Shown in pieces: positions 33,540 to 60,299 of a stretch of 64,000 nt of DNA. Within the stretch, counting starts at the first letter, position 1. Each line of letters opens with the position of its first letter. The notes under the pieces were generated by a model that saw nothing but the letters and a program-made list of their open reading frames with translations, had not been told where the DNA came from and did not search any database. Source of the stretch: Narcine bancroftii (taxonomy: Eukaryota); assembly GCF_036971445.1 (NCBI RefSeq), contig NC_091469.1, positions 268,584,001 to 268,648,000 of the forward strand. The letters run 5' to 3'. Both the position numbers and the translations under genes were made by a program.

Positions 33540-33830
33540 CGCTGGGTGGACTCCGTCCCCTCGCGTCTCCGCGGGCCGCAGCTTTCCCCCGCCCATTTGA
33601 CGGCGAAATTGAAAGCAAGGCGGAAAGGGGAGGCCGGGCGTTGGCCCAAGACGGAAAAAGCCCTCGGCCCCGCGATCGGAGACCATGGGCCGCTGCCGGG
33701 CCGGGGACCGGCCGCGGCTTCTGCTGCTGTTGGTCCTGGCGGGGCTCTCAGGTAGGAAGCGGAGGGAAGGGCCGAACGTCCCCGGGGCCGGGCGGAAGTG
33801 CTGGGGGCACGTAGGGAGGTGGAGGGGGTG
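33540..33830 (+). promoter_or_regulatory. CpG-island promoter/first-exon region of gene 2
   Basis: Dense CpG/GC segment in AT-rich surroundings, with GC-box-like CCCCGCCC (~33587) and GGGCGG, surrounding a strong Kozak ATG (GAGACCATGG). Confidence 0.75.
33685..33751 (+). CDS. NCR3LG1: Gene 2 exon 1, signal peptide
   Basis: MGRCRAGDRPRLLLLLVLAGLS with Kozak ACCATGG and donor CAG|GTAGGA, phase 1. Too short for the ORF track. Confidence 0.85.
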
Positions 33831-36800: not shown

Positions 36801-39800
36801 AGTATTTTTAATTAAAGCCCAATGGAGAAACAAATGAAAAAGAGATAGCAAAGAAAAGGTTTCATGATAGAACATGGGGGAATATTTGTGTGAAGGACTT
36901 CAATGAATAGACTATTTTTGAGTTATAGTTTTTTTATGTTAAACAAGATAAATATAAGAATTTTTTTATTATGCACTCTAATGTATATATATTTTTCCAT
37001 TTGTAGAGGGAACGTTGAAGTTGAGAACGAGCAAAGGTCCAGTGGAAGTATTGCTTAACGAAAATGGACTTCTCCATTGTGAAATTGATAAGCTTTACGG
37101 GCTTACATTGAGCTCAAATAATTTAGGCATTTCATGGGTTTTCATCCAGGGAACTGGAAAAAATAATATCTTCACTTATTCTAATGGAGAAATAACAAGT
37201 GTGTGGAAAGAAGCAGAGTTGTCAGAGAACTCCATTCTAAATGGAGACATGTCACTTATGCTAAAAAATGTTACGTTCAAACATTCTGGCAAGTATCAGT
37301 GTGAAGTTGTTATTCCACCAAATGAAAGGGACTCTCTTACAGTAAACCTCGAAGTTTTAGGTAAGGTAATTTTTTTCACACTACTTTGGATTATTTCATA
37401 TCATGGTTATCTTGTTTATGCATTATATTTCAGTGAAAATAGTTTCTGAAACACCATATTGCCAGCATAAAGCCTAAGCATGGAAGCAAAATTCTACATT
37501 TAGTGGGAATAGACCAGTTTCTATGCTGTGTGACCAGATGATTTGCTTTCATATAGTCCTTTTCAATCATTTCAAATGGTGCTGACAGCAGATAACAGAC
37601 CATTTGACTGCACTGATCTATGTTGGTGTTTATGTTCTCACAAACCTCCCATCCTTTTGAAATTTACCCCTGATGAACCATCCACTTATGCCAGTGCATG
37701 CACATCATCACACACTATAAAGCAAATCCAGGCAGATTAGTAACATTGAATCCCTCCTGGACAACCTCAGTGTATTCTACACTCACTTCAAGCAGGAGGT
37801 TGGCGAATTAGAGGTACTCTCCTTTCCTATCTTGAGCTCACCAGCACCCGTGATCACCAATGTACCTGTCAGATAGGCCTTCTGAAGATGTGTCCTCTTG
37901 TGATTGCGTGTTAATTAAACATCTGCTTCAATTTTCAGTTTCTGCAGATTTTCCCACAAGGCCTTTGCAGAAGGACACAATTTTACTTAAAATTATTCAA
38001 ATTATTCAAATTTTGAGTAAAAATTTCATTCCTACCACCAATGTCAAATTCACTGATTTATGTTTTTCAGGTCCTTTTCAATTCTTTTTCAAGTATAGGA
38101 GTCATATGTTCCACAGTCCCTTTTAATACAGTTTTTTCCTCCACGGTACTTCTTTCACCAGCTTCCCTATCAGCTTTAAATCATTGAGCCGATCCAAAAT
38201 ATTAATTTTTGAATACAGCCATTGTGACTTTAATACACCTTTTTTCTTTTGCAGCACAACCCACGGTGACTGTTGTTTCAGAAAAGATTGTGGAAGTTGG
38301 CACTGGTGGAGAGATGACCTTGCGTTGTCAGTTAACTGGCTATTATCCTTGTGAAAGCAATGTGGAATGGATTCAATTAACCCCATCACAAATTGAAACA
38401 AAGTTGGTAACTAATCTATGCATCTCCCCACCAATCAAAAATCCAGACAGAACATGTAATGCAATCGTTGAAGTTAGCTTGGAACCTCGTGTAAAAGACA
38501 TTGGCAGTAGTTATGAATGCCATGTGATGCACAAGACTTTGCCAGAGCCAAATATTGTGAATGCTGAAGTGATTTTGAAAGGTTAGTTGCAGAACTTTTT
38601 AATTTCTTTTTCTTAAAGTTCAAAGTTTTGAACTTTTGCTGGAGTTTTGTAGATTCTTGTTTCCTTTGGAGGGGTGAGTGAAAAAGATTTGGCTCCAGTT
38701 GGTTCTGTCACTCCTTGGGTGACCGATGAGCCAATCTGAGGCTTTAATTGGGGCAGAGGAACAATTTTTGGGGTCGATTTCTGGGAGTGTAAAATGAGAG
38801 GGGATGACATTATTTTCCATCATTTGTACTGAAATTGGATGTGCTCATGGTTCAAGTTTTCAGTGCTATCCAGAATGTTCTTTCTCCAGAATAGGTAATC
38901 AGGCAAAAGGTTCCAGGATTCTTCACGGATATTGCATATTTTCAAGGAGGCTTTGACAACATCTGTGAATCAATTCTGTTGTACAGTCAGAAACCTTGTT
39001 TCATGGCAGCATGAAATAGAATGTCTTTTTCTGGTACGAGGCCAGAATAGGCTTGGGGTGGGATTGTACTGTTTACTTAGGAAACAAGTATGTTCATTTT
39101 AGCAAAGAATAGTTTTGATATTAACATTTCAAAGGCTTTCCAAATGTTGATTAAATGGAGTATTCTTACATATTATTTCAATAGAGCTTTATGCTTGCAC
39201 CTATTCAAGAACTCCTTTCTGTGTGCGCAGATAAATCTAAATACATGTCTATTACTTGTAAGTACTCTGCTAAAGTATTTAGTAGTTTCTTTAAATGATA
39301 GTTGTTTCTATTATTCTATCATTTAATCTGGCATCTAGTACTTTTGATAATTGTGCGACTTTTTTTGAATATCTTATTTAAGTTTCCACATGCATTAATG
39401 TCTAGATACACAAAATATCCCTCATACATCTCAAATTAGAATTACTTAGTATTATATACCCACCACCCCTTCCCCCAAATAATAATAGCCCCAAAGAATG
39501 TAAAAAAACAAAAAGACAAAGGAAGAAACACATCTGATTACTAAAGTTTCAATACATCGTCAAATTTTGCCTTTATAATATTAAACATGTACTAATTCCA
39601 AGAAGTTGACAAGGTTCTTGAGGTTTAGGGGATATCATATAGTACCTACAATATGTAAATATAGGGTCCAAAATTTTAATAAAATACCGTGTTTATTTCT
39701 TAAATTATATGTAATTTTCTCAAGAGAAAATACGAATTTGATTTCCATGTCACTGCTATACATTTTCTTATGACAATGCAATTTGCACGAATTCCTTTTG

Positions 39801-42800: not shown

Positions 42801-45800
42801 TCTTGCCAATCCACACTGACTGGGTCTAGAGGTGAGAAAATCTAGGAACCAATGTGATATTAAACCTAAGAGTTCGCTGATTTGTTTTGAAAGCTTAACA
42901 GTAGTTGATAAAGAGCATCCTTATTTATCCTTTAAGTACCGGTAATCCTATGCGGAAAAAAAAATCTACCTTGGTCACTTTAAGTCTTTTCCCAAACAGG
43001 TTCAGTCTTTTCCTTTATATCAATACCATTTTAATAAATTTTTTTGCACTTTTTTTTTCTTATAACAGAAGCAGAAATACTTATTTCCACACAGTCGATA
43101 ATTGGAAGCATTATTGGAAGCATTTTTATCACTGTATTGTTAACAGCCACAGGAATTCTCATTTACATATGCTACTTTTATAAAGGTAACTCCTAGATAT
43201 ATCGAGAATGAATTTGTAGTGAAAGACTCAAAGGAAATTTAAATTATTTGGGCGGGAACAATAAAAACCTTGGCCTTTTTCAAATTTTATAAACTTCTGT
43301 TTAACTAGTACTGCTCAAAGCCTGTTGCGATTTTGTGATTTTTAAAAAAAAATTATTTCATTTGGAATTATAACATAAAATGTTTAATCTTTCCATTGAA
43401 ATTAATTGTGAATTGTCTAACTATCAAAGATTGTTCATCCCAACTGGGAATAATTTGGAATAATTCATCTTTAAATTTCTGATAATTTTCTTTTATTCTC
43501 AGTTCCACCCAAAGTATCAGATATTCAATTGCCTGATCGAATTGTACACCATGAAGTAGCAGATATTATTTGCCACGTGGCTGGATTCCGACCTGGTGAC
43601 ATTGATCTCAGCTGGTATTTGCAAAGGAATGGCAAGGACGAGCAATTAATTCATAAAGACAAAAAAGCATTTTTAGGTTCTATGCTTTGCAAACAAAATG
43701 AGCCAAGTGAAATGAGTACAAATGAGAATCATTGGAAAGTCCTCAGAAGTTTCCAGACATATGAAAATTTGACACACAGCTTTTCCAGCACTCTTAAGGT
43801 TTTTCCTGATGTTATGACAGACAATAACGCAAGAATCATATGCAGAGTGACGCATCCAGCAGGTTCTGAAGAAAGATGCAGCTTTTTAGCTGTCCATGGA
43901 AGTAAGTATTTTACAAATCAAAATAAGGACTTTACAGGGTTGGAAGACCATGTGGTCATTTCGTATTCCATTTGCCAAAATTTTTGATTTCCAGTCCCAT
44001 TTTTTGACTTGGATCATTTGTGCTGCAAATCCTTATGGTAAATCCTAGAAGTTACAATCTTGAGTTTTTAAGTGTATAGTGTTGAGAATTTTTACTTGGA
44101 CCAGCATATTATGCAAAGGACATATGATCCCCTCCATAATGTTTGGGATAAAGGCATTTTTTTTCTTTATTTTTTCCGGTTTTAAATTTGTAATCAAATA
44201 CTACACGTGATTAATGTGCACATTCCAGATTTTATTCAAGGTTATTTGTGTATATTTAGATTTGATCATATAGAAAATTGCAGCACTTTTTATACATAGT
44301 TCCCCCAATTCAGAGCACCATAATGTTTGGGACATTTGGCTTCTCGGGTATTTGTGATTACTCATTGCTTTATTGGTGCAGGCAAAGAAGAAAAGGGAGC
44401 TGGGCTTGCTTTTAAGCTTTTGATCACCTTTGGAATCTGCAATTGCCATTTCTCAAGAGTTGTTCCAATGAAAGTCAAATAAGCTATTATGAGGCTGAAA
44501 AACAAGAATAAAAGAGTAAAATACATTGCTTAAACCCTATACCAAAAGTAACAATTTGGAACTTCATTATGAAGAAAAAGCATACTGGTGAGCTCAGTGA
44601 TCACAAAGGAACTGGTAGGCCAAGGAAGACCTCCACTGGTGATGACAGAAAAATGAAGAAAAATCCCCACATGCCTGTCTGACAGATCAGAAACACTCTT
44701 CAGGAGGCAAGTGGGGATGTGTCAACGACTACCATCTGCAGAAGTCTTCATGAACAGAAATACAGAGGCTATACTGCAAGATGCAAACCACTAATTAGCC
44801 ACAGAAACAGGATGCCCACATTACAGTTGGCCAAGAACTGTTTAAAAGAGCTGCAGAATTCTGGAAAAAGGTCCTAAAGACAGATGAGACCAAGATTAAA
44901 CTGGATCAGAGTGATGGAAGAGCAGTGTGGAGGCATAAAGGAACTCCCCAAGATCCAAAGCATACTAGCTCCTTTGTGAAATGTGGTGGGGGTATTATGT
45001 CCTGGGCAAGAATAAGCTGCCACAGGTATGGGCATGCTTGTCTTCATTAATGAGTAACTGCTGATGGCAGTAGCAAAATGAATGATGAGGTGTATAGAAA
45101 CATCTGCTCAAGTTTGATCCAATGCCTCCAAACTCATTTTTGACAGTGCTTCATCCCACAGCAAAACAATGATCCCAAACACACTGCTAAAGCAACAAAG
45201 GGGTTTTTCAAAGCTAAAATTTTTGAATGGCCAAGCCAGTCACGCAATCTAAATCTAACTGACTATGTATTCCATATGCTGAAGAGAAAACTTAAGTGGA
45301 CGATCCCCTGTATGAAGCAGGAACTGAAGATGGCTGCAGTAGAGGCCTGGAAGAGCATCACCAGAGATGATACTCAGCATCTCAAATGTCTATGAATCAA
45401 AAACTTCAATCAGTCACTGCATGCAATGGATATGCAACAAGGATCTAAGCATGACAACTTCCATTGCTATGACATACCATTGCTATGTCCCAAATATTAT
45501 GGTGCCCTGAAATGAGGACACAAATATATAAAAAGTGCTGAAATTCCTAAGTGGTCAAGCCAAAAAGTATACTGTTACAGGCCATGTTAGAATAGTTATG
45601 GGTAAAATATGCCTTTAAAAGAGATAGATTGTGGGGGATTTAGTTTAGGCTTGTACTTCACAAACAGAGTAACACTTCAAAAAAGACATCTCATTTAACG
45701 TGCAAGAGCTTTGCTGAAGTGAGACATTGTGTCACCAGTGACTTTGCAGAGGCAATGGAACTGCTTTGGAAAGAACTTCACAAAGAGGTGCAAATGAAAC

Positions 45801-45915
45801 AAAGTCCAGACTTGGAAACTGAAAAGATCTTTCAAAGATTGGGTTTGGAGCTCTGTAAGAAATCGTATGGTTTTTACAAGCAAAGAGGAAAAACAGACAG
45901 ATGATTTCTTTTTTG

Positions 45916-45951
<36 letters not shown>

Positions 45952-48900
45952 CATTTTACAGTAGCAGTTGAGGCTGCAAAATGGCAAGCTGATAGGCTTG
46001 TTGAAAAAAACCATTTTGAAGACGGGTTGTGAGTTCTTGAGTTTGGCCTGTTCAAAATCCTTGTAGTCCTTACAAGAGGAAATGGCTGGCTAGAGTATTT
46101 CTCCTGAAATAAGAGAAACTCTGTGGTGACCTGGAAGAAGAGGTTATCATTTGGAAAACCCATGATGAGGCAAGTTTCTTCGGCAAGACACTCAGTTTGT
46201 ACGTATCCAATGAGCAACAAATTTCTCTCTGAAACCAACAAGAACCTTCCTGAATGGTAACCATTTAACTTTAAACGTCAGAGTCTGGTGAAGGTTCATA
46301 AATGTTAAATTTTGAATTGCCTGATACTGGTGAACTTGGAGAAGTGAAAAATGAATGATTGGACAGTGAAACAGAGAACTTTCCTGAACATATACACATT
46401 ACATACATGAGCGCTTAGAATTAGAAGGGGGTTAAGTTAGGTTAGATTAAGTTAATAGCAATAAGTTTAAGATTGATCTTGTTATTATGTTTAAAGAAAA
46501 TTTAAAGTAACTTTTGGTTAAGTAACCATTGTCTTGGTGAATTTCTATTGCTGCTGCGTTTTGGAGTCCTCTGGGCTCGTAACAATACAAATAATCTTGA
46601 ATAAAATCTGGAATGTTCTCTTTACACACATGTGAATTGTTTGATTACAATTTAAAACTGTGGAGCACAGGGGGAAAATAAAGGGGAAAAAGTATCTTTT
46701 GGTGGGCACTATATGTAAAATTATCTTTTTTAATTTAAAGTTTCCATAATGTATCATTGAGTTATATGAAGTAGATATTTTGCATAGTTTACCGTTCATT
46801 ATCTTATAGATGGGTTGGTTTTAGGTATATCCAATGGAGTAACATTTATTTAAGTGTATTCTTATGTAATTGTGGAACATGTTATAAGGGTTGAATAAAA
46901 GCCACCAAGAAATATTAACAGGAAAAACTGAGGGAACTATCTTTTGAAAAGTTTAGTATACAAAAGTAAATCTGCAATGAGGATTATAGGTTCTGAAGGA
47001 TTAGGAAGGAACTGTGGCAACATACCAGAAATCCTTGGAGCTCTTCCTCCCCCCCACCCCTACCCTCTTTTTTTTAAAAAAAGCTGCTGGTTTGCAAAGT
47101 TCAGCACAAGTTTTATGTGACATCTTTTACAAGACCTAAAGCACTTTACAGACAGAGGAAAAATTTTGAGATTTAGTCAGTTACAAAGTTGGGGACAGGC
47201 TGTGGAATGAAGGAAAATTAATGGAATTAAGATACAGTTAAGGTCAAGAATTATTTGAATGTGGGCTGACTGTTCAGTCTTGTGCCAATTTTATGACTCT
47301 CTTTGATGGGATTACCTTTCTGCTAATTCGTCCTGAAACATTGAGCTGGGCTATTGGATCAGAAAATTGTTGCAAGTGCAAGAGTAATTACGGATACTTC
47401 AAGAGTTAGGATGGGTTAAAATAAAGAGGATCAGACAAGTAACAAAGAGAATTGACATGCTTCAAACCTAATATATACCTTAATTTAATTGCTGAGTTGT
47501 AAATGACCATTCATTTTCCAGATAATGTATGATGAATATGCTATGTCATTTTTCTTGAGTTTGTGAATGTTTAAACTGATTTTACTTTTTTTCTCCCTCT
47601 TTAGTTGCTCCTAAGTTGGCTAAAATAATTAGACCCCCTGTTATACTTCATAACCGTTCTTTGATGCTGATATATCCAATAAAATTGTTCAAGCCAAATC
47701 TTCTAAATATCAAATGGTATAAAATAATAAATGGAGTAAAATCGCTTTTGGTGGAGTATAAAACAGGAAGTAAACTAGATTTCACTGTTGACCAGTATTC
47801 CCATTGTGTGGATGAGTTTAGTTCTGATAATGATACCTACAGTGTCAACAGCATGTTGATCTTTATCGCAACAATCAAAGAAGATGATGGCAAAGAATAT
47901 CTCTGTGAAGTGAATCACGATGCTATGGAAAATTCAGTGGAAGAGAAGGTTAAACTGGAAGTAAAAGGTAAATCAAACTCAGATTTCTTGATCGTGCAAT
48001 CTTCATGAAAATCGAGCCATTTCCCCCCTTTGTTCACATTTTATATTTCAATAAAATGACCTATTTTTGCTACTTTTAGTGACTCATCATTACCTAAGTA
48101 ATCATCAGGACTGATAGTTGGGTGGCTTCCCTGTATTATCAGCAGTTTTGGTCATCCAGCTGGCCATTCAGCTAGAAAAAGTTCAGAAAAGATCAAAGCA
48201 ATGTTATGGAGATGTAGGCTAGTGTAATCAGGAAAGGCTGGGACTTGTCTCCTCGGAGCATAGATCACCAAGGGAGAATCTTGTAGAGGTAAGGGGCATG
48301 AATAAAGTAAATAATCATTGTCTTTATGGCACTGCAGAGGAGTCTAAAACTAGAGGACAGATTTAAGGCAAGAATGGAAAGATTTGAAATGGATCTGTGG
48401 GTCTCCTATTTCACATAGAGGATGGTAGGTAGGTGGTATGAGCTGTCAGAAGAAGTGGTAGTGGCAATGACATTTGGAATGTTTAAAAGACATTTAGACA
48501 AGTAGGAACTATTGAGCAGGATAAGGGTGTAACATTGGCAAATTGGATGAGTTTAGATAGTCAACTTGGTTGCCTTGGACAAGTTGGGCTAAAGGATTTA
48601 TTTCTATGCGGACCAAGTTGACTATCTGAGCTCATCTCATTTGTGATGTGAACCCCTGTTGATTAAGAAATGTGTACCGATGATTACAGCTTCCACTGTG
48701 TGGAATTTTTGATGTTTTAAAAAAAGAGGAAACATTAATTCAATCTTTTAGGAGTGTATTTAAATTACATAAAAGGTACTAAATTTTGACTGAAACACAA
48801 AAGTCTGCAGAAACTGTGTTTGTAGTAAAAGCACAAAAAATGCTGGAGGAACTCGCAGGGTCCATAGGAAGTAAAGATATATAACCGACGTTTCAGACCT

Positions 48901-51900
48901 GAGCCCTTCTTCAAGGTATAAGTAAAAAGTAAGCAGGTGTCTGAATTGGTGAGGAGGTGAGAATTGACTTAGGTTGTTGTTTGGAGCTCTCTGGAAGCAG
49001 AGCAAGGGGAAAAGGAAGAGAGAGAGAGAACTAGGGAAAAAGAAGGAAAAGGGGGAGAGGGAGAGGAAAGGAGACAGAAGGAAAAGGGGAGAAAGGAAAG
49101 GAGATACAGGGAAAAATGGGGAAGGGGGGGGGGGCTAATGGAAACCAGAGAAATTGATGTTAATGCCATCTGGAGAGTGCCCAGATGGAATACAAGGTGC
49201 TGTTCCTCCAATTTGTTGGGTGGTCTCAGTCTGGCAAATTTGACAACAATCTGTCTAAAATTTCCATAATTCTATACACATATAGTTATATTGAACCTTA
49301 TGATTCAAATTCTTTTGATTCAGCAAATGAAACATAAACCAAATTGCCTTTTTATTTTTGTGACAAGCAAGTTTATTGAACTAAAAGTGATATTCATTAG
49401 TTTTATATCCTGCCAGTGTGATTCTGCATCTGAAACAAGAATGTATGATATTAAGACATGTTATCATTGAGAAAGTCCTGTTAAGCAGCACTCTCCACCT
49501 CAAAAGGCTATAATTAGTTCATAAGTTTTCTTGGAGGCAACTCCATCAGAACATGCAAAGATTTTGACTTCTGGACCTTCTTGCCTTAATTTTGTGTGAA
49601 CAACTGTTAAAATATGTTTTATTTCTAATCTTTTTTTTTCTGATGAAAGCACATTACATTTTCTGGGATTTTGTTCGATGTGCACAAATTGTTTCTGCAT
49701 TTTTGAAATTTAAATTTTAAAACATTTTATTTACAACATGGTAGTGGCCGATTCCGGCTATTGAAACCTGTGCAGCCCAATTACACCCAATTAACAAACA
49801 ATCCTGACATTTTGGAGGGTGGGAGGAAACCAGAGAACCTGGACAAAACCCAGACAAGGAGAATGTACAAACTCCTTACAGACAGCACCGGACTCAAACC
49901 CAAGTTGCTGGTGCTGTAACAGCATCCCACTAACTGCTACACTAGCCATGCCCCCTGTAGTAATGCAGTAAAATAATTGGTGTGAAAAACTTGTGGATAT
50001 TTTTTTCTTCCTCCTTTGTGTTTTGCTTTCCTGTTCCAATATAATCTTGTGCTGCATGCAGATTTGGATTGCCCAATATTTAGGGAAAATATTCATAGGA
50101 TATGTTAATTAGTACACTAAAATACTTTTGAACATCGTCATATTTTTACACAGCTTTGGCATTTTCTGTCCTTGGATTTAGATTCAAACTACATTCCAGA
50201 TTGATCCCTAAATTCAAGTAGAATATTAACAATGCATTGTTGGAGATGTTGTAGTGGTCCGCCCATTAGCAAGTGAACTGGAACACAAAATGGTGGACTA
50301 ACACGATGAGCATACACACTAACTGCCCTCACTGGCCAGAAGCCTGCTTGGCAGGAACCATGGTCAATCAAAGACCAGCATGCCAGTGACGTCATATCTG
50401 CCCGCAGTGGCAGGAATACCCGACCCAGTGGCGGGAAGCTGGGCTTATAGAAGCAGGGCTGGGGAGATCAATAAATCAGTCTTGACTTCACTTACACCCG
50501 TGTGTGCGTCGTTCTTCTCTTGCTCTACAGTAGTGCCTTGCTACAATGTCATATTTTGAGTATTGTAGTTGCACTAGGGATGCAGTAAGTGAAAGAACCA
50601 CACAGTTGAAAGAGTTGAACCAACTGACTTTAATAGAACTCTTGCACACGCTGAAATCCCTCGGAACCCGATGATACTTGTGACTGCCAGGGCATTTATG
50701 ACATCAGCCGCTAGGCAGTGGGCTTTCTCTTCACCCAGAGCTCTTACCCGCAACTCCATGAGCCGGTTCATTTGTTGCGTGGGCAGGCCAGCACAGTATG
50801 AAGTAAAATGGAGGATTGATTTCTGTGTTCAGGAGAATGTTAACAGTTCTCCAATGTATTCATGAATGGAATAAAGTGCTACATTTTTTTTTTATTTTGC
50901 AGCATCTCCTTCACTTGATACTATCCTGTGTGAACCAGTGAACCCTAAAATTGAAAAAGAATTGATTCTATCTTGTAAAGTTCATTCATTTTATCCAAAA
51001 AGCATTACTGTCCAATGGTTCAAAGATGAGGAACCTATAAAGGATTTCACAATATCTGACATAGTTCAGAATCACAAGGATAATTTGTTTGAATTAACCA
51101 CTACTTGCACAATAATTCCAACGTTATCAGACTTGCAGAGTAAATATCAATGTCGGGTTACACACAAGAGCCTGAGATCTCCAAGCTTTGTGGAATATGT
51201 TCTTGAAAATTTAGGTATGTTCACTCTCCAATATTATACTATAATTTAAAAATAAATATTTTTAGTATATAATTACATTGTTTTCTTATTTCATAATTTT
51301 TATTTACTCAACTTTCTTTTGTCATTCCTCTTAACCTGCGTGATTATGTTTGATTGTTTACTGTTTCTGGTCAGAAAAACATTGTTGGCCAGCGTCCTCC
51401 AGTCATTGCTGGAGAGGCTGTGGCTGGGGTTTCCACACGCAGTCATACTACAAGGAAGGCAACCAGAATGAAGGCAGGAACAGAAGATCCTTTGGTTATG
51501 CAGAAGAAGCAGGAATCTGTTGAGCCAGAATCTCTTCCAATTGAAAAGATTCTTGTGAATCTTGAATCTAAATTATCTTATACAATGCAGGGATTATCCA
51601 AGATTATGACTGAACTTGGTACTAGGTTTAATACCCTGGTGAAAATACATTCTCAACAGATGGCTGAGTTTGGAGCTTTTAAGCTTGAAGTGAGAGATAA
51701 ATTTAATTTGTGTGAAGAAGATATAGACGAAATACGGGATCAAGTTTTTGATGTGACCAAAATGGTTGAAGACTTACAAATTCAAAATAAAAATTTGGTG
51801 AAAAAGATTGATTATTTGGAAAACCAATCCAGATGGAACAATATAAAGATTATTGGTTTGCCGGAAGGTATGGAGGGACCAGACCCAAGAAAATTTTTTA

Positions 51901-54900: not shown

Positions 54901-57900
54901 TCCCAAAAGAATTATATTTACTAAATACTACCCAATTAAATAACAAGTCCTATACTTGTACCTTTTATATGGTGATGTGACAGACATTGAAGCATCCAAA
55001 TTATAATGGTATTTATTTCAATTATTTGAAATCAGATGAAAGTATCTTGAGCCATATCTGAAAATCCTAAAACAGCAATGCAATGGAAGTTCAAGTTTAA
55101 TGCACCATGATGGATTAATTATTTTATTTGAAGCTATATGAAGTTTATTTCATGGTGCCTTGATTTAGAAAGACTCTGCAGCTTAAAATGTAATATAATT
55201 GATTAAAAGAGGGATTTTGGGAACAAAGTTTTTTGTGGAGTTTATATTAAATGACAGGCTTAACAGGAGACCTGTATGCATCTTTGTGTGAATTTAAATT
55301 GAGGTCTAAATATTTATAGTTTATATTGTGGTATTTTGGTTACTTTATGAACATTGAATTCATATGGAACCAATTTTTTTGTGGAACATGTATCTGAAAC
55401 AAAATTTAAGCTTCATCTCAACTTTTTTTATTCCTCTTTATTACAGCATCTTCCCCCAAAATAAATGAAATTACATGTGATCCTGTCCAGCCTGAAATAG
55501 GGAAAGAATTGACTTTGACCTGTGAGATAAAGGAGTTTTATCCAGAGGATATTCAAATCCATTGGTTCAGAGATTGTGTGAGAATAGATGAAAATCAAAA
55601 TCTTGGAATCATCAGTGAAACATTAAGTATTGAACATGGTCTGTACCACAAAATCACCAAATTAACCTGGATTCCAAGCACTGATGATCAACAAGCTGAA
55701 TACAAAGTTGAGGTTTGCCATTCAAAGTCTTCTGCCAATCTACTGAAACAAAGCTTTCAGCTATTTCTTAAAGGTAAGTTAAAATGGAGTAGATTTTAAG
55801 ACCTGTACCATTGAGAATGATTGGAGTTTTATAATATTATACAGGTAACTCCACATCACAGGAGAAGTGTAGTGGTTCTGTTCTAGAAAATGCTTCATAT
55901 TGCAATTTTCTATAATGCAAAGCAGCATCAAATGTGCATGTGTCAAGAAACGAGAGTTGAAAGAATAATTTTATATTTATTTATTTATGTACTTTCACAT
56001 AAATTTGGTGATAGCAAATCTTACTCCTAATCTCCAGTTTTTGGGTAGAGAATTCTATGCAGGTACTTACCACCATCAAAAGTATGACCCATGTAAAAGT
56101 TGACACCCACCCCCCCTCAAAATTTGACATGAAAAATCAGTCCCAAAAACTCAATTATTGATGTGTATATACTGTAAGGTGGAAGCTGCATATTCTGCAG
56201 TGATGAGCCCATCTGACCCTGCAATATATCAACATCATCTGAAAGGCTTTACTTTGAGTATAATCAAATATTGTTAAATGGATGTACTAACACTCATCTA
56301 TTGGACAAGGATAAGACAGACAAGGCACCCAATACAAATATAAATTTCCTTCAACACCAGCTACCTGCAAGTGCTGCTTCCCATGTGAATAGCACACATA
56401 AAGTACCGTGATATGTTGAATGTATTTTAATATCACCTCCCAAACCTCAGTCACCGAGATTGACAACACCAGGTTCCCGGAGCATGTTGTGGTCATCTGA
56501 AATGGGCATCCACTGCAATTGTTTCATTCTATTGGGTTTGCCACAGGTGAATTCCACTCAGCTGCACCTGTCTGACATCCAACCGGGGCAGTGGGTTTCA
56601 TTCTGCATTTAGGTCTCAGGCTGGGTATCCTCAAAGCATAATCCCCGGGCATCTGACAGCCAGTGACAATTTGACAGATGTAAAAGTCCTTTAAATTTGT
56701 CCAAAATGTACATCAATTTTAAATAAATTGTAATGAAAAAAGTAAATCATTAAAACACACACTAAAACATGAACAAATAATATTAAAATAAAATGAAGTC
56801 CACAATTTTCTTTTTCACTGGATGGTTTATTTCAATTGAATGGGGTTGCCTCTTGTACATTGATTCTCCTGGCATACTTGAAGGTGAAATGAGAAGTATA
56901 TTGGATTTTATTTGCATCTTGTATTTCTCCACCATTTGAGTCAACTAGGTGCCCAGCAATAAAGCAGGTAATCATGTATGTTAGATTCAGGGCAGATTAG
57001 AAGTTCAGGACTTCTGGACAACTGACAGCCTGATTCCTGAAGTTCCCAATAGCCCAACCCTAACTGAGTCAAAATTTTGTCACCTTCTGCTTAACAGCAT
57101 GTGGGAGTGTGTTTATGCTTTACTTCAGTTGATCAAAGGTGAGTAAAGATTGATTAACTATCTCTGTCAACCATGTCCACTCTCTAAGGATAGTTCTCAA
57201 AAAACCTTGGAAATACACTACGGCTTAATTAAGTCTTTTATGGCTATTATTTTTTTTCATTATAGGCGCACCCAAATTTTCGGACTTCAAAATGGAGCCA
57301 AAGGTCCCATTGTATGGCCGTCCTTTATCTGTATCTTCTTCAGTCTATGATATCTTAAATAAAAATATTTCTGTTCAATGGTACAAGGGATCGCAGCTTA
57401 TAAAAAGTGGAGTAATGAATTCAGATTTAGTGCATACCCATGTGAACACTTACAAGATAAAGAGTTGCCTTCAATTTTTAGTGACTGCAGAAGACTTTGA
57501 AAGGGAGTTGATCCTTGTGTATAAAGATATTTCTAAAAACGAAGAATTCAGGAGACGTATTCAGCTGCCCCTGAGAGGTGAGTGTATGGCAGATATGCTT
57601 CTTTTAACTGTATATTAAGAATTTATTATTTAACGTTTGCATTGGAAATGCCAAAGATTTTGCAATGTGTACAAGAGAATGCCTTTTGTTCATCACTTTT
57701 CACTAGTTTTTAGAAGAAACTTCTCGTCTTTGGATGTCTAATTCAATGTGGGATTCTCTACAGGAGGACTCATATCTAATAACAGAAGAACCAACAGGGT
57801 AGTTCCTCAGCTAGTCAGATTGAATAGTATTCACACACACTCACTCATTCTGTAAAGAATAAACATTGGAGGTATTATGTAGAAAGCAAATAATAATTAG

Positions 57901-60299
57901 AGTCTTAGAGTTATACAGCCTAGACACAACTGGCCCTTCATCTGATCATGCCCCTGCTGTATTCACACTAATCTCATTTGGCCACATTAGGACCATATCC
58001 TTGTCTACTTGATTCCATGGCCTCTTTTGGCAGGACAACCCAGTTAACAACCACTCTCCTCTGTAGATTAGTTTATACATTGTGTATTAAGCAGAAAACA
58101 ATTAAAATTTTCCTTTTACAATCTTTTTATTGTTTAACACACAAAAAATCCATAAATATATAAAATGCGAGGTTATAGATTATAAATCAAATAAATATAC
58201 ATTATAAACAAACAGTAATTGATTCCCCATGGCTCTATTGTTAAAATAATAAAAACAGTCGAAGAAAAAAATCTTATCTATTCTAAACTATCTAACTAAC
58301 CTAAATTAAATTATCTAATCCCCTCACCTAATAGAAGTTGGGATGCCTTAAAACAATAAAATTCAGTAATAAACAAAAAAAATGCTCCTTTACATAAATG
58401 GAATTAGTTAACATGAAAGGGAAAAACAAAAATGAAACATTATATTAAAGCAGGCTTAAGAATCACGAAAACATTTGCCACATACTATCAAATTTAATAT
58501 CGGTATCAGTTATAGCACATCTAATTTCTAAATTTAAACAAGCTAAAGTTTGGCATAAAAAAAAACAATGAAAATTTTGCTGTATCATTTTTCAATTAGA
58601 AAGTTTTTAGGCTTCTCAAATGAACTTCTTAAGCCCAAAAAGGATGTTTAAAATGAACACAATCTTTTTAATGACTCAACTTGCAGCCATTTCAAATTGG
58701 GTAATTAGCTTGATTTTTGCAGCTGGATGGTTATATGAGCACAGACTTTATTGGCATCGTTAAAGGATATCACTGCAAAAACATTTAGAGTTCCGAGGTA
58801 TGAACGCCAGAGATTGCCGCCAGTTTAATATACCTACAGTAAATTCTCTGATACATGTGTGAAAAATCATTTATTGCTGGTTTTCAATGAATATTGCTTA
58901 TGAAAAATTAAAAATGATTTCATTTATACATTTATACATTGTTTTAGAACATAAACAAAGTACAGGTATACCCTGTATAACATGATTTTGAAAAGTGTGG
59001 GTTTTGATACAGTATGACACAGTTTGAAATATCTGACCCGCAGTTTAAAATTTGCAATGTTAAAGTTTTATTGTTGTTGCTACTTAAACCACCTCCTAAC
59101 ACTTTGCAAGGCTCTAGTTAAAAATATTTGAAATCTAGGCACTGAGCTGTGGAATTGAGAGAGTTAAGTGGCTGTGTTGAAAGTTATTGCTGTCCTCGGG
59201 GTGATCGGGCTTCCTGCATTATCCCACAGCACGCTGCCTTACACTGATAGGAATCTGTTTTTTCTTCATCTCTGCTCTGATGTGGCAGATCAGCGAGTTT
59301 GCAAGCAACTGAACAATGCCAGTTTGTATGGAGGGGAACCCCTGGAATTTGCTGTGGAATAGAGAGAGTTAAGTGGCTGTGTTTTAAGTTATTGCTGTCC
59401 CCGCTGTGATCAGGCTCCCTGCACTATCCCATGGTAGTACCAATTTAGTGAAAGTCTCATGTGGGCGATTTGACGCAAATCTACATTTTACCCCCTCCAT
59501 AAATCTTCGTCCGCGAAGCCAAGCCAAAGATATGAGACAAATACTTGCTTCAATTAAACTATGTTCACGTTGCCAATAAAGATCAATTTTATATATCCCT
59601 TTTATAGGATTGAACCATATCAAAGTGCATTGTAATAATGCTTTGAACAGTGTGACTTTCCATAGCACTGAACTTGTTTGGAATGCATTAACCATGTTAT
59701 ACAGTGTATGCCTGTACAGTAAAACCCATGTTATCCAGAATTCAAGCAACTTGCAAAAAAAAAAATCACAGAAAATAAATAAGTAAAAAAACATGAAAGT
59801 TTAAAATTGGCACGCTTTGCAATTAGTTTGTGCAGTTTCGAGCATCCGGAAAATTCACTTATCTAGCATCTATCAATCCCAATGGGAGCCAGACACCAGG
59901 GGTTTTACTACATTCAACTTAAACAGTTATTGATAAAATTCTTCAACAATTGATTACATTTAATGTTTGTGACTTCATTTTTCCACAGCGGTCACTCCCA
60001 AGGTATCAGAAATCAAGTCCAACCCTGTTCAGCCTGAAATAGATGGAAATGCCACTCTTTCTTGTAGAATTTCAGAGTTTGCTCCCATGGATATAAACGT
60101 TATTTGGAGCAAGGGATGTAAGATATACAAAGTTGAGGAAATCATCGTAGAAGTGCCGAAAATTGATGAAACTGGGCTGTACTCTACAATGACAAGACTG
60201 CCGATCATCATAAATGAGGATTCAGAAGAATATACTTGTGAAATTGAACATGAGAAGACCAATGATATTGTTGAGAAAAAATTTACCTTGAAGATTTAG
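33685..60299 (+). CDS. NCR3LG1: Gene 2: B7-H6 (NCR3LG1)-like receptor, leader-IgV-IgC1-TM-6x cytoplasmic IgC1, 10 exons, 962 aa
   Basis: join(33685-33751,37007-37360,38255-38581,43069-43185,43503-43901,47605-47967,50903-51214,55447-55773,57266-57577,59989-60299) = 2889 nt, open throughout, all introns GT-AG phase 1. The V/C1 pair resembles human B7-H6 as recalled (EGTLKL/EGDLKV, LGISW/MGITW, YQCEVVIPP/YRCEVVVTP, PPIKNPD/PTIKNMD). Confidence 0.85.
34365..34718. mobile_element. MITE with 16-bp terminal inverted repeats
   Basis: TAGCTGCTTTCAGGTG...CACCTGAAAGCGGCTA with internal repeats of CACCTGAA(AG). GC-rich insert inside the CR1. Confidence 0.7.
35345..35560. mobile_element. hAT-type MITE
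   Basis: CAGGGGCAGACAACC...GGTTGCCAACCCCTG termini with 8-bp TSD GTATAGAA/GCATAGAA. Confidence 0.85.
37007..37360 (+). CDS. NCR3LG1: Gene 2 exon 2, extracellular IgV domain (B7-H6-like)
   Basis: ttgtag acceptor and G|gtaagg donor. Motifs LLHCEI...LGISW...GDMSLMLKNV...SGKYQCEVVIPP. Confidence 0.93.
38255..38581 (+). CDS. NCR3LG1: Gene 2 exon 3, extracellular IgC1 domain
   Basis: gcag acceptor and G|gttagt donor. Motifs LRCQLTGYYP..VEW...IKNPDRTCN...SYECHVMHKTL. Confidence 0.93.
39361..41278 (-). mobile_element. Internally deleted L1 retaining both ends, with a nested solo LTR
   Basis: Endonuclease remnants (LGGDFNFCLDP, YSRIDIFL, ILSDHSP), an ORF2 C-terminal remnant, a T-run at the left end, and TSD ATTGTGCGACT/ATTGTGTGACT (39350-39360 and 41279-41289). 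Confidence 0.75.
40539..40819 (+). mobile_element. Solo LTR related to the Gypsy 1 LTRs
   Basis: TGTGGTG...CACCATA termini. Shares TCAATCAGCCGACCTGAAT and AATAAAGCCTGTTGTACAGTCTT with the Gypsy 1 LTR sense strand. TSD GTACC/GTATC. Confidence 0.85.
41598..42043 (+). mobile_element. RTE 3' fragment inserted into a Rex1/Babar-like LINE (about 41410-42920, minus)
   Basis: Matches 25295-25750 and ends in AAGCCAAGCCAAAGAAAAG. The host LINE continues on both sides (compare the uninterrupted junction at 6960-6990). Confidence 0.9.
43069..43185 (+). CDS. NCR3LG1: Gene 2 exon 4, transmembrane segment
   Basis: Long polypyrimidine tract with acag acceptor and AAG|gtaac donor, phase 1/1. Translates as EAEILISTQSIIGSIIGSIFITVLLTATGILIYICYFYK, a frame not shown in the ORF track. 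Confidence 0.9.
43503..43901 (+). CDS. Gene 2 exon 5, post-TM IgC1 domain 1
   Basis: ctcag acceptor and A|gtaagt donor. VPPKVSDI...IICHVAGFRPGDIDLSWY...IICRVTHP, with a long insertion after the C strand. Confidence 0.9.
44122..46713 (+). mobile_element. Decayed Tc1-family transposon with IR/DR-type ends; right end interrupted by a solo LTR
   Basis: Direct repeats CCATAATGTTTGGGA (~44135 and ~44318) are mirrored by ATGTCCCAAATATTATGG (~45485). Transposase remnants (TDETKI, QQNNDPKH, EWPSQS) at about 44460-45445. Ends approximate. Confidence 0.85.
45573..46584 (+). mobile_element. Solo LTR of about 1 kb
   Basis: TGTTAC...GTAACA inverted termini with 4-bp TSD ATAC and an internal (GA)n/G run. 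Confidence 0.88.
47605..47967 (+). CDS. Gene 2 exon 6, post-TM IgC1 domain 2 (first Cys replaced by Tyr)
   Basis: ttag acceptor and G|gtaaat donor. APKLAKI...LIYPIKLFKPNLLNIKWYK...TYSVNSML...EYLCEVNH. Confidence 0.9.
48130..48610 (+). mobile_element. Old CR1 3' fragment
   Basis: Degenerate CR1 3' region (CTAGAAAAAGTTCAGAAAAGAT..., TCTAAAACTAGAGG..., TTTAAAAGACATTTAGACAAG). Boundaries approximate. Confidence 0.6.
48790..49235 (-). mobile_element. Penelope-like element remnant with degenerate hammerhead motif
   Basis: Peptide EEQHLVFHLGTL, a pyrimidine-rich tract, then CCTTGAAGAAGGGCTCAGGTCTGAAACGTCGG on the minus strand. Confidence 0.65.
49720..49950 (-). mobile_element. tRNA-derived SINE (V-SINE/HE1-like)
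   Basis: GGGAGGAAACCAGAGAACCTGG..AAAACCC..GAGAATGTACAAACTCCTTACAGACAG core. B-box-like GGGTTTGAGTCC on the minus strand. Confidence 0.75.
50250..50545 (+). mobile_element. Solo LTR
   Basis: TGTAG...CTACA termini, TATA-like element and AATAAA, TSD ATGT. Confidence 0.85.
50564..50795 (-). mobile_element. Solo LTR adjacent to the previous one
   Basis: TGTAG...GCACA termini with TSD GTAT. Orientation inferred. Confidence 0.65.
50903..51214 (+). CDS. Gene 2 exon 7, post-TM IgC1 domain 3
   Basis: gcag acceptor and G|gtatgt donor. LSCKVHSFYPKSITVQWFK...KYQCRVTHKSL. Confidence 0.92.
51388..54050 (+). mobile_element. L1 derivative: open ORF1, spacer and only the C-terminal end of ORF2 (EN and RT missing)
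   Basis: ORF1 is open to 52439 (LENQSRWNNIKIIGLPEG, FFYADLS, RYPAVLK). ORF2 tail from 52763 (CFHCDQ..HAVWLC). AATAAA plus poly(A), and a 15-bp TSD AGAAAAACATTGTTG (51373-51387 and 54051-54065). Confidence 0.92.
54279..54364. repeat. Minisatellite, 4 x 21 bp
   Basis: GTGACCGGGACTGCACTGTTA repeated head to tail with minor variants. Confidence 0.92.
55447..55773 (+). CDS. Gene 2 exon 8, post-TM IgC1 domain 4 (second Cys replaced by Val)
   Basis: tacag acceptor and G|gtaagt donor. LTCEIKEFYPEDIQIHWF...GLYHKITKL...EYKVEVCH. Confidence 0.92.
57266..57577 (+). CDS. Gene 2 exon 9, post-TM Ig-like domain 5 (both canonical Cys lost)
   Basis: tatag acceptor and G|gtgagt donor. APKFSDFKMEPKVPLYG..LSVSSSVYD...SVQWYK...ELILVYK...IQLPLR, aligning with gene 1 exon C. 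Confidence 0.87.
59146..59432. repeat. Imperfect direct duplication of about 85 bp
   Basis: GCTGTGGAAT.GAGAGAGTTAAGTGGCTGTGTT..AAGTTATTGCTGTCC occurs at about 59146 and 59351. Confidence 0.85.
59486..59530 (+). mobile_element. RTE extreme 3'-end stub
   Basis: TTTTACCCCCTCCATAAATCTTCGTCCGCGAAGCCAAGCCAAAGA, identical to 25706-25750. Confidence 0.9.
59714..59910. mobile_element. Tc1/mariner-type MITE
   Basis: TACAGTAAAACCC...GGGGTTTTACTA termini. A related left end occurs at about 30910. Confidence 0.6.
59989..60299 (+). CDS. Gene 2 exon 10, terminal post-TM IgC1 domain 6 with stop codon
   Basis: cacag acceptor. VTPKVSEIK...LSCRISEFAPMDINVIW...GLYSTMTRL...YTCEIEH...VEKKFTLKI*. Confidence 0.92.

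What the first reader, a model, noticed from the sequence alone, without database searches (positions are those of the whole stretch)
33685..60299. B7-H6-like receptor with six C1-type Ig domains on the cytoplasmic side of the membrane
Seen: ten phase-1 exons splice into one open 962-aa frame ordered leader, IgV, IgC1, a single uncharged TM (43069-43185), then six IgC1-like exons (~675 aa) and a stop. There is no second TM and no conventional tail. Known: C1-set domains are essentially extracellular or luminal modules of adaptive immunity (Ig, TCR, MHC, tapasin, SIRP, B7-H6), and human B7-H6 instead has a Gag-like cytoplasmic region. I recall mention of intracellular Ig domains in non-mammalian B7-H6 but cannot verify it, so novelty needs checking; an array of six would still be extreme. 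Inference: an NKp30-ligand-type ectodomain is coupled to a large intracellular Ig scaffold or sensor, possibly linking cytosolic cues to surface display.
Basis: partly seen in the sequence, partly recalled or inferred. Interest (0 to 1): 0.9.

Follow-up and report, generated by a model that had tools for sequence, protein, structure and literature searches.

The report
B7-H6-like ligand with cytoplasmic Ig array
This electric-ray gene encodes a B7-H6-like surface protein whose whole predicted cytoplasmic part is six antibody-type (C1-set) Ig domains, a design kept since the common ancestor of sharks and amphibians and not described in any paper I could read.

Summary
Ten phase-1 exons at 33685-60299 have good splice sites. 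They match an NCBI model of Narcine bancroftii (XP_069754465.1, 962 aa, "uncharacterized protein").

- **Transcripts:** In four RNA assemblies, one contig per run joins C1 exon > TM exon > first post-TM Ig exon (38581>43069, 43185>43503) without a mismatch.
- **Ectodomain:** It is B7-H6-like. Human B7-H6 is the best solved relative (TM-score 0.88, 26-28% identity).
- **Conservation:** All 15 chondrichthyan orthologues keep V-C1-TM-6 Ig and the same C-terminus. Lungfish, bichir/reedfish and amphibians share the design. A domain tree shows position-by-position orthology, so the array is ancestral to jawed vertebrates.
- **Topology:** A cytosolic array is inferred, not shown. There is one hydrophobic segment, and net flank charge is -0.45 on the N side and +2.72 on the C side. 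The canonical Cys pair is kept in 88% of pre-TM domains, 100% of conventional extracellular relatives and 50% of post-TM domains. N-glycosylation sequons are enriched outside (observed/expected 1.8) and near chance behind the TM (1.17).
- **Function:** The sensor or scaffold role is speculation. A predicted TM-skipping (secreted) isoform in a caecilian is the main rival.
- **Novelty:** Nothing in the searchable literature describes this, but two key B7H6 papers were not readable.

Earlier scan notes were on this same window, not on other DNA.

The parts
33685..33751 (+). Exon 1: start codon and signal peptide (MGRCRAGDRPRLLLLLVLAGLS), phase-1 donor G|GTAGGA
   Evidence: Sequence read. It is identical to the N-terminus of P0184/P0177.
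37007..37360 (+). Exon 2: IgV domain, B7-H6-like
   Evidence: Pfam V-set 5e-10. The best solved relatives are human B7-H6 chains 6yjp_C, 3pv6_A and 4zso_E, E 7e-7 to 2e-6, covering the whole domain.
38255..38581 (+). Exon 3: extracellular IgC1 domain
   Evidence: Pfam C1-set 4e-9. PDB matches are UrIg2 C3, IgM Cmu4, B7-H6 C domain and MHC. The Cys pair is kept in 15/15 orthologues. Spliced to exon 4 in RNA contigs.
43069..43185 (+). Exon 4: connecting peptide, single transmembrane helix (Ser/Gly-rich face SIIGSIIGSIF...) and YFYK stop-transfer
   Evidence: Kyte-Doolittle peak at residues 268-286 of P0184, the only one in the protein. AF2 helix at 270-285. Junctions 38581>43069 and 43185>43503 are present in four runs. 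Mean identity among 15 orthologues is 0.62.
43503..43901 (+). Exon 5: post-TM Ig domain D1 (C1-set-like with a long C-D insertion), starting about 6 residues after the TM
   Evidence: Pfam C1-set 1.5e-5. 158 library proteins match at E<=1e-3, mostly the same family. Cys pair 15/15 and 14/15.
47605..47967 (+). Exon 6: post-TM Ig domain D2. In Narcine the B-strand Cys is Tyr.
   Evidence: Pfam C1-set 1.2e-3, 19.5 bits, below the cut-off of 21. B-strand Cys in 14/15 orthologues, with Tyr only here. AF2 pLDDT about 90.
50903..51214 (+). Exon 7: post-TM Ig domain D3, canonical C1-set
   Evidence: Pfam C1-set 3.8e-15. PDB matches are Ig CH/CL, SIRP C1, beta2-microglobulin and MHC-I alpha3, E down to 3e-16.
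55447..55773 (+). Exon 8: post-TM Ig domain D4. The canonical F-strand Cys is replaced by Val/Ile in all 15 orthologues.
   Evidence: Pfam C1-set 1.3e-9. Cys counts.
57266..57577 (+). Exon 9: post-TM Ig domain D5, with no canonical Cys pair. An internal alternative acceptor near 57481 gives isoform X2 (890 aa).
   Evidence: Pfam C1-set 2.8e-5. F-strand Cys 0/15 and B-strand Cys 5/15. Isoform X2 mapping.
59989..60299 (+). Exon 10: post-TM Ig domain D6 and stop codon directly after the last strand (..EKKFTLKI*)
   Evidence: Pfam C1-set 3.7e-8. The same C-terminus is found in all 15 orthologues. There is no phase-1 donor before the stop.
2068..8611 (+). Last four Ig exons (D3-D6) and stop of the upstream tandem paralogue (P0241, 941 aa, same V-C1-TM-6 Ig design)
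   Evidence: tblastn of P0241 gives 98-100% identity at 2068-2370, 3765-4094, 5814-6125 and 8297-8608. It is orthologous to Pristis P0004 and Hypanus P0178.

Best explanation
The locus is one gene of Narcine bancroftii that makes one mRNA for a type I membrane protein. A cleaved signal peptide puts an IgV-IgC1 ectodomain of the B7-H6 (NCR3LG1, NKp30-ligand) type outside the cell. A single conserved helix with a Ser/Gly face spans the membrane. The whole remainder, six tandem C1-set-type Ig folds ending at the last beta-strand, stays in the cytosol. The cytosolic array folds without needing its disulphides and has been under purifying selection since the ancestor of jawed vertebrates. Shown here: the exons, the splicing, the domain types and the conservation. 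Inferred: the topology. Speculative: the array is a protein-binding scaffold that couples the surface ligand to cytoplasmic partners (reverse or inside-out signalling, clustering, or cytoskeletal anchorage). In this it would resemble the B30.2 domain of butyrophilins or the FnIII repeats of integrin beta4.
For: Splicing: C1>TM>D1 junctions sit in one contig in each of four runs. Contig lengths fit the full exon set, which is an inference. Three skate transcript contigs of 3.1-3.9 kb encode the whole 949-aa ORF including the TM. The NCBI model is identical to the exons.

B7-H6 type: the V exon's best PDB hits are human B7-H6. The AF2 ectodomain superposes on 3pv7_A with TMt 0.88, rmsd 2.2 A and 26% identity. 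NCBI names the Amblyraja orthologue NCR3LG1.

Fold: all 8 Ig domains have pLDDT 85-95, including the Cys-less D4 and D5.

Conservation: 15 orthologues of 941-974 aa are colinear with the same end. Per-domain identity of D2-D6 (0.58-0.63) is about that of V (0.61); D1 is lowest at 0.49. D1, D2, D5 and the ecto-C1 each form a clade uniting chondrichthyan and bony-vertebrate genes; the D6 clade lacks the gene-A and reedfish copies, and D3 and D4 are more weakly supported.

Topology: 92 of 150 cluster representatives have one internal TM followed by 2-14 Ig domains. Net flank charge is N side -0.45 and C side +2.72, with C>N in 78/92. The Cys pair is kept in 97/110 pre-TM domains, 242/484 post-TM domains and 86/86 domains of relatives with a C-terminal TM (Fisher 1e-14 and 1e-23). 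Sequon observed/expected is 1.76 pre-TM, 1.83 in conventional ectodomains and 1.17 post-TM.
Against: No experiment shows the topology. I had only a hydropathy scan, not SignalP or TMHMM. D3 and D6 keep the canonical Cys pair in 15/15 orthologues, and D1 and D2 in 14/15, over more than 400 My. That is more than expected if disulphides never form. Sequons behind the TM are still slightly above chance (1.17). Gnomon predicts a caecilian isoform that skips exactly the TM exon. All exons are phase 1, so a secreted 8-Ig form is possible. The statistics use 50%-identity representatives, which are still related to each other. Nothing tested here bears on the proposed scaffold or sensor role. NKp30 binding is untested.
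Confidence: 0.72

Rival explanations
1. The working product is a secreted 8-Ig protein made by skipping the TM exon. The Ig array then acts outside the cell, like UrIg-type multi-C1 proteins. The TM-containing form would be a minor or regulatory isoform.
For: The caecilian isoform X3 (P0153, 916 aa) lacks exactly the 37-aa TM exon, and other isoforms skip single Ig exons. All exons are phase 1. Cys pairs are kept in D1, D2, D3 and D6 of the orthologues. The nearest conventional relatives carry the same domain type outside the cell.
Against: The TM exon is included in the single contig found in each of four Narcine runs. No C1>D1 joint is among the listed joints, although 93 weaker joints were not shown. 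It is also included in three independent skate transcript contigs. The TM exon is as conserved as the V domain. The post-TM domains show family-wide Cys-pair loss and no sequon enrichment, unlike truly extracellular relatives. Isoform X3 is a prediction only.
Confidence: 0.15
2. The Ig array reaches the lumen or cell surface by unusual processing, as in IGSF1. There an internal hydrophobic linker is cleaved and re-initiates translocation, so Ig domains on both sides of it are luminal.
For: IGSF1 is a precedent for Ig loops on both sides of an internal hydrophobic linker (my own knowledge; the abstract PMC6552037 was listed). Retained Cys pairs in four of six domains.
Against: Here there is only one segment of about 25-29 residues, and D1 starts about 6 residues after it. 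The charge pattern points to C-in. The Cys and sequon signatures differ from luminal domains.
Confidence: 0.05
3. The model is an artefact: read-through or chimeric assembly of a short B7-H6 gene (leader-V-C1-TM) with a separate downstream multi-C1 gene.
For: The assembler's caution that a contig across two genes does not prove one transcript. Exon shuffling from a multi-C1 gene is a plausible origin for the array.
Against: The 117-nt TM exon is joined on both sides within one contig in four runs. The same fused ORF is seen in skate transcripts and in models of 15 chondrichthyans, lungfish, bichir and amphibians. D1 has no leader or start of its own, and all junctions are in phase.
Confidence: 0.03

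Closest known systems
Human B7-H6 (NCR3LG1), ligand of NKp30
   Same: Leader, IgV, IgC1 (C1-set rather than the C2-type domain that I recall for other B7 members; not checked here) and a single TM. Best sequence match of the V exon and best two-domain structural match. NCBI gives this name to the skate orthologue.
   Different: From my own knowledge, the human protein has a cytoplasmic tail of about 170 aa described as Gag-like with ITIM/SH2/SH3 motifs. Here the tail is six C1-set Ig folds (674 aa). Orthology and NKp30 binding were not tested.
Butyrophilins (e.g. BTN3A1/BTN2A1)
   Same: B7-related IgV-IgC ectodomain, single TM, and a folded beta-sandwich module in the cytosol that in butyrophilins senses an intracellular ligand and changes what is seen outside (my own knowledge). 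This is the functional analogy for inside-out signalling.
   Different: The butyrophilin cytosolic module is a single B30.2 (PRY/SPRY) domain, not Ig. Pfam found no SPRY match here.
Integrin beta4
   Same: A membrane receptor that uses tandem 'extracellular-type' beta-sandwich modules in the cytoplasm as a docking scaffold (my own knowledge).
   Different: Those are FnIII repeats, the ectodomain is unrelated, and it is not an immune ligand.
UrIg2 / 'titin-like' multi-C1 receptors of cartilaginous fish
   Same: Long tandem arrays of C1-set domains encoded by phase-1 exons. The ecto-C1 exon's best PDB hit is UrIg2 C3. Relatives with 5-17 C1-like domains appear among the hits for D1. UrIg2 is described in PMC12227049.
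   Different: In UrIg2 the whole array is extracellular, the V is a VJ type, and the TM is at the C-terminus. Those relatives keep the Cys pair in 86/86 domains.
IGSF1
   Same: Ig domains on both sides of an internal hydrophobic region.
   Different: IGSF1 has C2-type loops. Here there is a single hydrophobic segment and no C-terminal TM.
Cytosolic Ig domains of titin, obscurin and MyBP-C
   Same: Ig folds that work in the reducing cytosol without disulphides. Titin I65-I70 is the top overall Foldseek hit for the whole model.
   Different: Those are I-set domains of soluble sarcomeric proteins. Here the domains are C1-set by Pfam and carry the FYP...W...YxCxVxH signature.

Membership tests
B7-H6 / NCR3LG1 | IgV followed by a C1-set IgC in the ectodomain | tested here: met
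   Pfam V-set 5e-10 and C1-set 4e-9. The AF2 model superposes on 3pv7_A with TMt 0.88, rmsd 2.2 A over 224 columns.
B7-H6 / NCR3LG1 | Closer in sequence to B7-H6 than to other B7 members | tested here: met
   The V exon scores B7-H6 at E 7e-7 and CD276 (B7-H3) at 3e-3. No other B7 member is listed. This compares solved structures only, and no phylogeny was built.
B7-H6 / NCR3LG1 | Orthology by synteny with NCR3LG1 or linkage to NKp30/MHC | not tested
The window holds only this gene, its tandem paralogue and transposons.
B7-H6 / NCR3LG1 | Binds NKp30 | not testable with these tools
It needs a binding assay.
B7-H6 / NCR3LG1 | Gag-like cytoplasmic tail (human form) | tested here: not met
   The tail is six C1-set-type Ig domains. 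This is the point of difference, so I file the gene as B7-H6-like, not as a proven orthologue.
C1-set Ig domain (for D1-D6) | Sequence profile and signature (B-strand Cys, C-strand Trp, YxCxVxH) | tested here: met
   C1-set is the best Pfam family for all six; D2 is below the cut-off. The seven C1-like domains align with the signature. D3 hits Ig C, SIRP C1, beta2-microglobulin and MHC alpha3 down to 3e-16. Trp is kept in 447/484 family domains.
C1-set Ig domain (for D1-D6) | Intradomain disulphide conserved | tested here: inconclusive
   Kept in D1, D2, D3 and D6 of the orthologues (14-15 of 15) and absent in D4 and D5 in all 15. Family-wide the pair is kept in only 50% of post-TM domains.
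C1-set Ig domain (for D1-D6) | Extracellular or luminal location | tested here: not met
   By prediction only: a single TM, positive-inside charge, and Cys and sequon signatures. It needs an experiment.
UrIg / UrIg2 | VJ-type V domain and TM at the C-terminus (or secreted) | tested here: not met
   The V exon ends ..SLTVNLEVL without an FGxG J motif. The TM lies between C1 and D1, and the stop follows directly after D6.
IGSF1-type internal linker | Two hydrophobic segments (stop-transfer plus internal signal) and a C-terminal TM | tested here: not met
   P0184 and its orthologues have one hydrophobic peak only.
Butyrophilin | Cytoplasmic B30.2 (PRY/SPRY) domain | tested here: not met
   No SPRY or PRY match in any exon.

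The most novel reading that the evidence does not exclude
Classical C1-set domains, the hallmark module of Ig, TCR and MHC, have worked inside the cytosol since the origin of jawed vertebrates. They would form the signalling or sensing tail of the ancestral NKp30 ligand. On this reading the ancestral B7-H6 was an inside-out device (cytosolic Ig array > TM > V-C1 display), and mammals later replaced the array with a Gag-like tail. This would not have been described before.
Probability: 0.2. Interest if true: 0.9.

Novelty: new variant of a known kind. Interest (0 to 1): 0.72.

Why it matters
C1-set domains are treated as strictly extracellular or luminal parts of adaptive immunity. Here is a family, conserved for more than 400 million years in sharks, rays, chimaeras, bichirs, lungfish and amphibians, that places 2-14 of them behind a transmembrane helix.

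If the topology holds, it would be the first cytosolic use of this domain type that I know of. It would also give a B7 ligand a large folded intracellular module, as butyrophilins have. That bears on how NK-cell ligands are controlled from inside the cell and on what the ancestral B7-H6 looked like.

The genes are all annotated as "uncharacterized protein", so the point is easy to test with tags, glycosylation mapping and pull-downs.

Tried and rejected
- **Homodimer test:** Complex prediction on residues 543-962 of P0184, two copies, gave no verdict. This is no evidence either way.
- **Literature:** Eight searches gave hits or none and one call failed on a format error. I also read into five papers. 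None describes Ig domains behind the TM of B7-H6 or a related protein. The two most relevant papers are not held: Flajnik et al. 2012, Immunogenetics 64:571, and Ohta & Flajnik 2015, Immunol Rev 267:6.
- **Profile search:** A search with alignment A1 added only the Narcine paralogue.
- **UrIg2-type reading (TM exon spurious, real TM downstream):** rejected. The TM exon is spliced in, and both paralogues and all orthologues stop right after D6.
- **Decaying pseudo-exons:** rejected. Conservation equals that of the V domain, and AF2 confidence is above 90.
- No phylogeny against other B7, tapasin or SIRP sequences was made, because no such sequences were available by reference.

Full report
**What is in the sequence.**
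The region 33685-60299 holds ten plus-strand exons. Each internal exon has a polypyrimidine-AG acceptor and a G|GT donor, and all are in phase 1.

- E1 33685-33751 (leader)
- E2 37007-37360
- E3 38255-38581
- E4 43069-43185
- E5 43503-43901
- E6 47605-47967
- E7 50903-51214
- E8 55447-55773
- E9 57266-57577
- E10 59989-60299, ending in a stop with no usable donor before it

Pfam calls E2 a V-set domain (5e-10). C1-set is the best family for E3 and for each of E5-E10, with E7 at 3.8e-15 and E6 just under the curated cut-off. E4 has no family. It encodes AEILISTQSIIGSIIGSIFITVLLTATGILIYICYFYK. There are no N runs in the window.

**Identity of the gene.**
Exon-by-exon comparison with proteins returned by the searches shows 100% identity to two NCBI models of the lesser electric ray, Narcine bancroftii:

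- XP_069754465.1, isoform X1, 962 aa (P0184)
- XP_069754472.1, isoform X2, 890 aa (P0177)

Isoform X2 uses an acceptor inside E9 near 57481. Both are named "uncharacterized protein". All whole-protein work used P0184.

**Is it one transcript with the TM exon in the middle?**
Four runs hold the stretch (four samples, one study, kept as assembled contigs). In each run a single contig of 2343-4148 nt carries E3, E4 and E5 joined at 38581>43069 and 43185>43503. Both joints have GT..AG ends and no mismatches, while the introns have almost no unique coverage. The spliced form shows that these contigs come from RNA.

The parts of the contigs beyond the laid stretch could not be inspected. Their lengths fit the model, which is an inference:

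- The X1 contig continues 1002 nt after E5, which equals E6+E7+E8 exactly. It stops where the X1/X2 isoforms branch.
- The X3 and X4 contigs continue 2925 and 2272 nt, against 1625 nt for E6-E10, leaving room for a 3' UTR.

Independent support comes from the skate orthologue. It is present as three transcript-sized contigs (3140-3886 nt) that each encode the complete 949-aa ORF including the TM. A direct E3>E5 joint is not among the listed joints, though 93 weaker joints were not shown.

**The ectodomain.**
The V exon's best solved relatives are three chains of human B7-H6 (E 7e-7 to 2e-6, full domain). The next B7 member, CD276, scores 3e-3. The C1 exon matches UrIg2 C3, IgM Cmu4, MHC and the B7-H6 C domain.

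An AlphaFold2 model of P0184 built on a 37-sequence alignment has mean pLDDT 84.5. Its V-C1 part superposes on B7-H6 (3pv7_A) with TM-score 0.88, rmsd 2.2 A and 26% identity. NCBI names the Amblyraja orthologue "natural cytotoxicity triggering receptor 3 ligand 1". This supports "B7-H6-like". Orthology and NKp30 binding are untested.

**The part behind the TM.**
The six domains align with each other and with the ecto-C1 domain. They share the C1-set signature: B-strand Cys, FYP..I.V.W, and YxCxVxH. D3 alone hits Ig constant domains, SIRP C1, beta2-microglobulin and MHC-I alpha3 down to 3e-16. AF2 folds all six as Ig sandwiches at pLDDT about 85-95, including D4 and D5, which lack the disulphide. 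It places a helix at 270-285. D1 begins about six residues after the hydrophobic segment, and the protein ends at the last strand of D6.

**Conservation.**
A full-library HMMER search with D1 found only 158 proteins at E<=1e-3, so this is a distinct domain type and not generic Ig.

One-to-one orthologues of 941-974 aa exist in 15 chondrichthyans, from Callorhinchus to sharks, skates and rays. All are colinear and all end in EKxFxLQ[IV]. Mean pairwise identity by domain:

| Domain | Identity |
|---|---|
| V | 0.61 |
| C1 | 0.72 |
| TM | 0.62 |
| D1 | 0.49 |
| D2 | 0.58 |
| D3 | 0.63 |
| D4 | 0.62 |
| D5 | 0.58 |
| D6 | 0.58 |

The array is therefore under purifying selection like the ectodomain.

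The same design occurs in Polypterus and Erpetoichthys, Protopterus, caecilians, salamanders and frogs, and all are unnamed. No amniote or teleost protein with an internal TM turned up, within the limits of the searches.

A maximum-likelihood tree of 67 single domains groups them by position, not by species:

- D1 94/83
- D2 100/96
- D5 99/91
- D6 100/97 (gene-B type, lungfish and amphibians only)
- ecto-C1 99/99
- D3 and D4 more weakly supported

Most clades unite chondrichthyan and bony-vertebrate genes, so the six-domain array predates their split. The window also holds the last four exons of a tandem paralogue (P0241, 941 aa, same design) at 2068-8611. Earlier notes of this scan on this same window said as much.

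**Which side of the membrane?**
Nothing here is an experiment. Four indirect lines agree.

1. *Hydrophobic segments.* P0184 and nearly all relatives have one hydrophobic segment besides the leader. 92 of 150 cluster representatives show one internal TM followed by 2-14 Ig domains.
2. *Flank charge.* In the 12 flanking residues the net charge is -0.45 on the N side and +2.72 on the C side. The C side is higher in 78 of 92 proteins, as expected for a C-terminus in the cytosol.
3. *Cys pair.* The canonical B-F pair is kept in 97/110 pre-TM C1 domains and in 86/86 domains of related proteins with a conventional C-terminal TM. It is kept in only 242/484 post-TM domains, of which 117 have lost both Cys. 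The structural Trp is kept in 447/484 (Fisher 1e-14 and 1e-23). Within the 15 orthologues, D4 and D5 lack the pair in every species. D1 lost it in Rhinoraja and D2 in Narcine.
4. *Sequons.* N-x-S/T sequons are enriched over shuffled expectation in the pre-TM part (1.76) and in conventional ectodomains (1.83). They are near chance behind the TM (1.17), at half the density.

The representatives are still related to each other, so the p-values overstate independence. The contrast with the extracellular relatives is nevertheless large.

**What speaks against it.**
D3 and D6 keep their Cys pair in all 15 orthologues, and D1 and D2 in 14 of 15. Gnomon predicts a caecilian isoform that skips exactly the TM exon, and others that skip single Ig exons. 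Every exon is phase 1, so a secreted 8-Ig form is mechanically easy. It would explain retained cysteines. I rate this rival at about 0.15, because the TM exon is included in every transcript contig seen in two species and is itself well conserved.

An IGSF1-like route to the lumen needs a second hydrophobic segment, which is absent. A two-gene artefact is excluded by the junctions and by conservation.

**How it probably works.**
- *Shown:* one mRNA, a B7-H6-type V-C1, a single TM, six conserved C1-set folds, and no other tail.
- *Inferred (about 0.7-0.8):* type I topology with the array in the cytosol.
- *Speculative (about 0.3):* the array is a docking scaffold or sensor that links the ligand to cytoplasmic partners. 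The analogies are butyrophilin B30.2 and integrin beta4 FnIII repeats. The conserved Ser/Gly face of the TM (SIVGSVIASIIIS) may mediate helix-helix association.

A homodimer test of D3-D6 gave no verdict.

**Novelty.**
The gene models are public, and one orthologue carries the NCR3LG1 name, so the gene is not new. I could not find its peculiar architecture described. The two key B7H6 evolution papers were not available. I therefore rate it a new variant of a known kind, with high but not maximal interest.

Noticed in passing
window 2068-8611 (+): Last four Ig exons and stop of a tandem paralogue (P0241, Narcine, 941 aa, 30% identical, same V-C1-TM-6 Ig design). In the domain tree this 'gene A' type groups with reedfish. 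The studied 'gene B' type groups with lungfish and amphibians, so the duplication may predate the split of cartilaginous and bony vertebrates.
   Followed up: partly
window 57481 (inside exon 9): An alternative acceptor used by annotated isoform X2 (890 aa) leaves only the last 33 residues of domain D5. The X1 RNA contig stops exactly at the end of exon 8, where the two forms branch.
   Followed up: partly
window 41498-42273 (intron 3) and 10797-11940: Two copies of the 3' part of a LINE: reverse-transcriptase C-terminus ORFs ending ..RRKNPTPNPNQPIFPC..SHKRACS. The intron copy collects huge summed contig depth in the RNA runs (up to about 1.6 million), so the element family is very abundant in these libraries.
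   Followed up: no
window 51354-52439 and 52763-53263 (intron 7); 13919-15187 (-): Long intact-looking transposon ORFs that I took for LINE ORF1/ORF2-like by eye (361, 166 and 422 aa) lie inside and between the two Ig genes.
   Followed up: no
window 47605-47967 (exon 6), residue 445 of P0184: Narcine alone among 15 orthologues has Tyr in place of the B-strand Cys of D2, leaving the F-strand Cys unpaired. Rhinoraja alone has Phe for the F-strand Cys of D1.
   Followed up: yes
Proteins P0001, P0009, P0033 (frogs): Frog relatives are very long (1566-2158 aa). In Dendropsophus the TM is at 328-346 and is followed by about 1800 aa of repeated C1-like domains. This is a lineage-specific expansion of the post-TM array.
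   Followed up: partly
Proteins P0021, P0147, P0117, P0141: Relatives with 5-17 C1-like domains and a conventional C-terminal TM occur in white shark and manta ('titin-like'), gar and sea turtles. They keep every Cys pair and may be UrIg2-type genes, which could be the source of the array by exon shuffling.
   Followed up: partly
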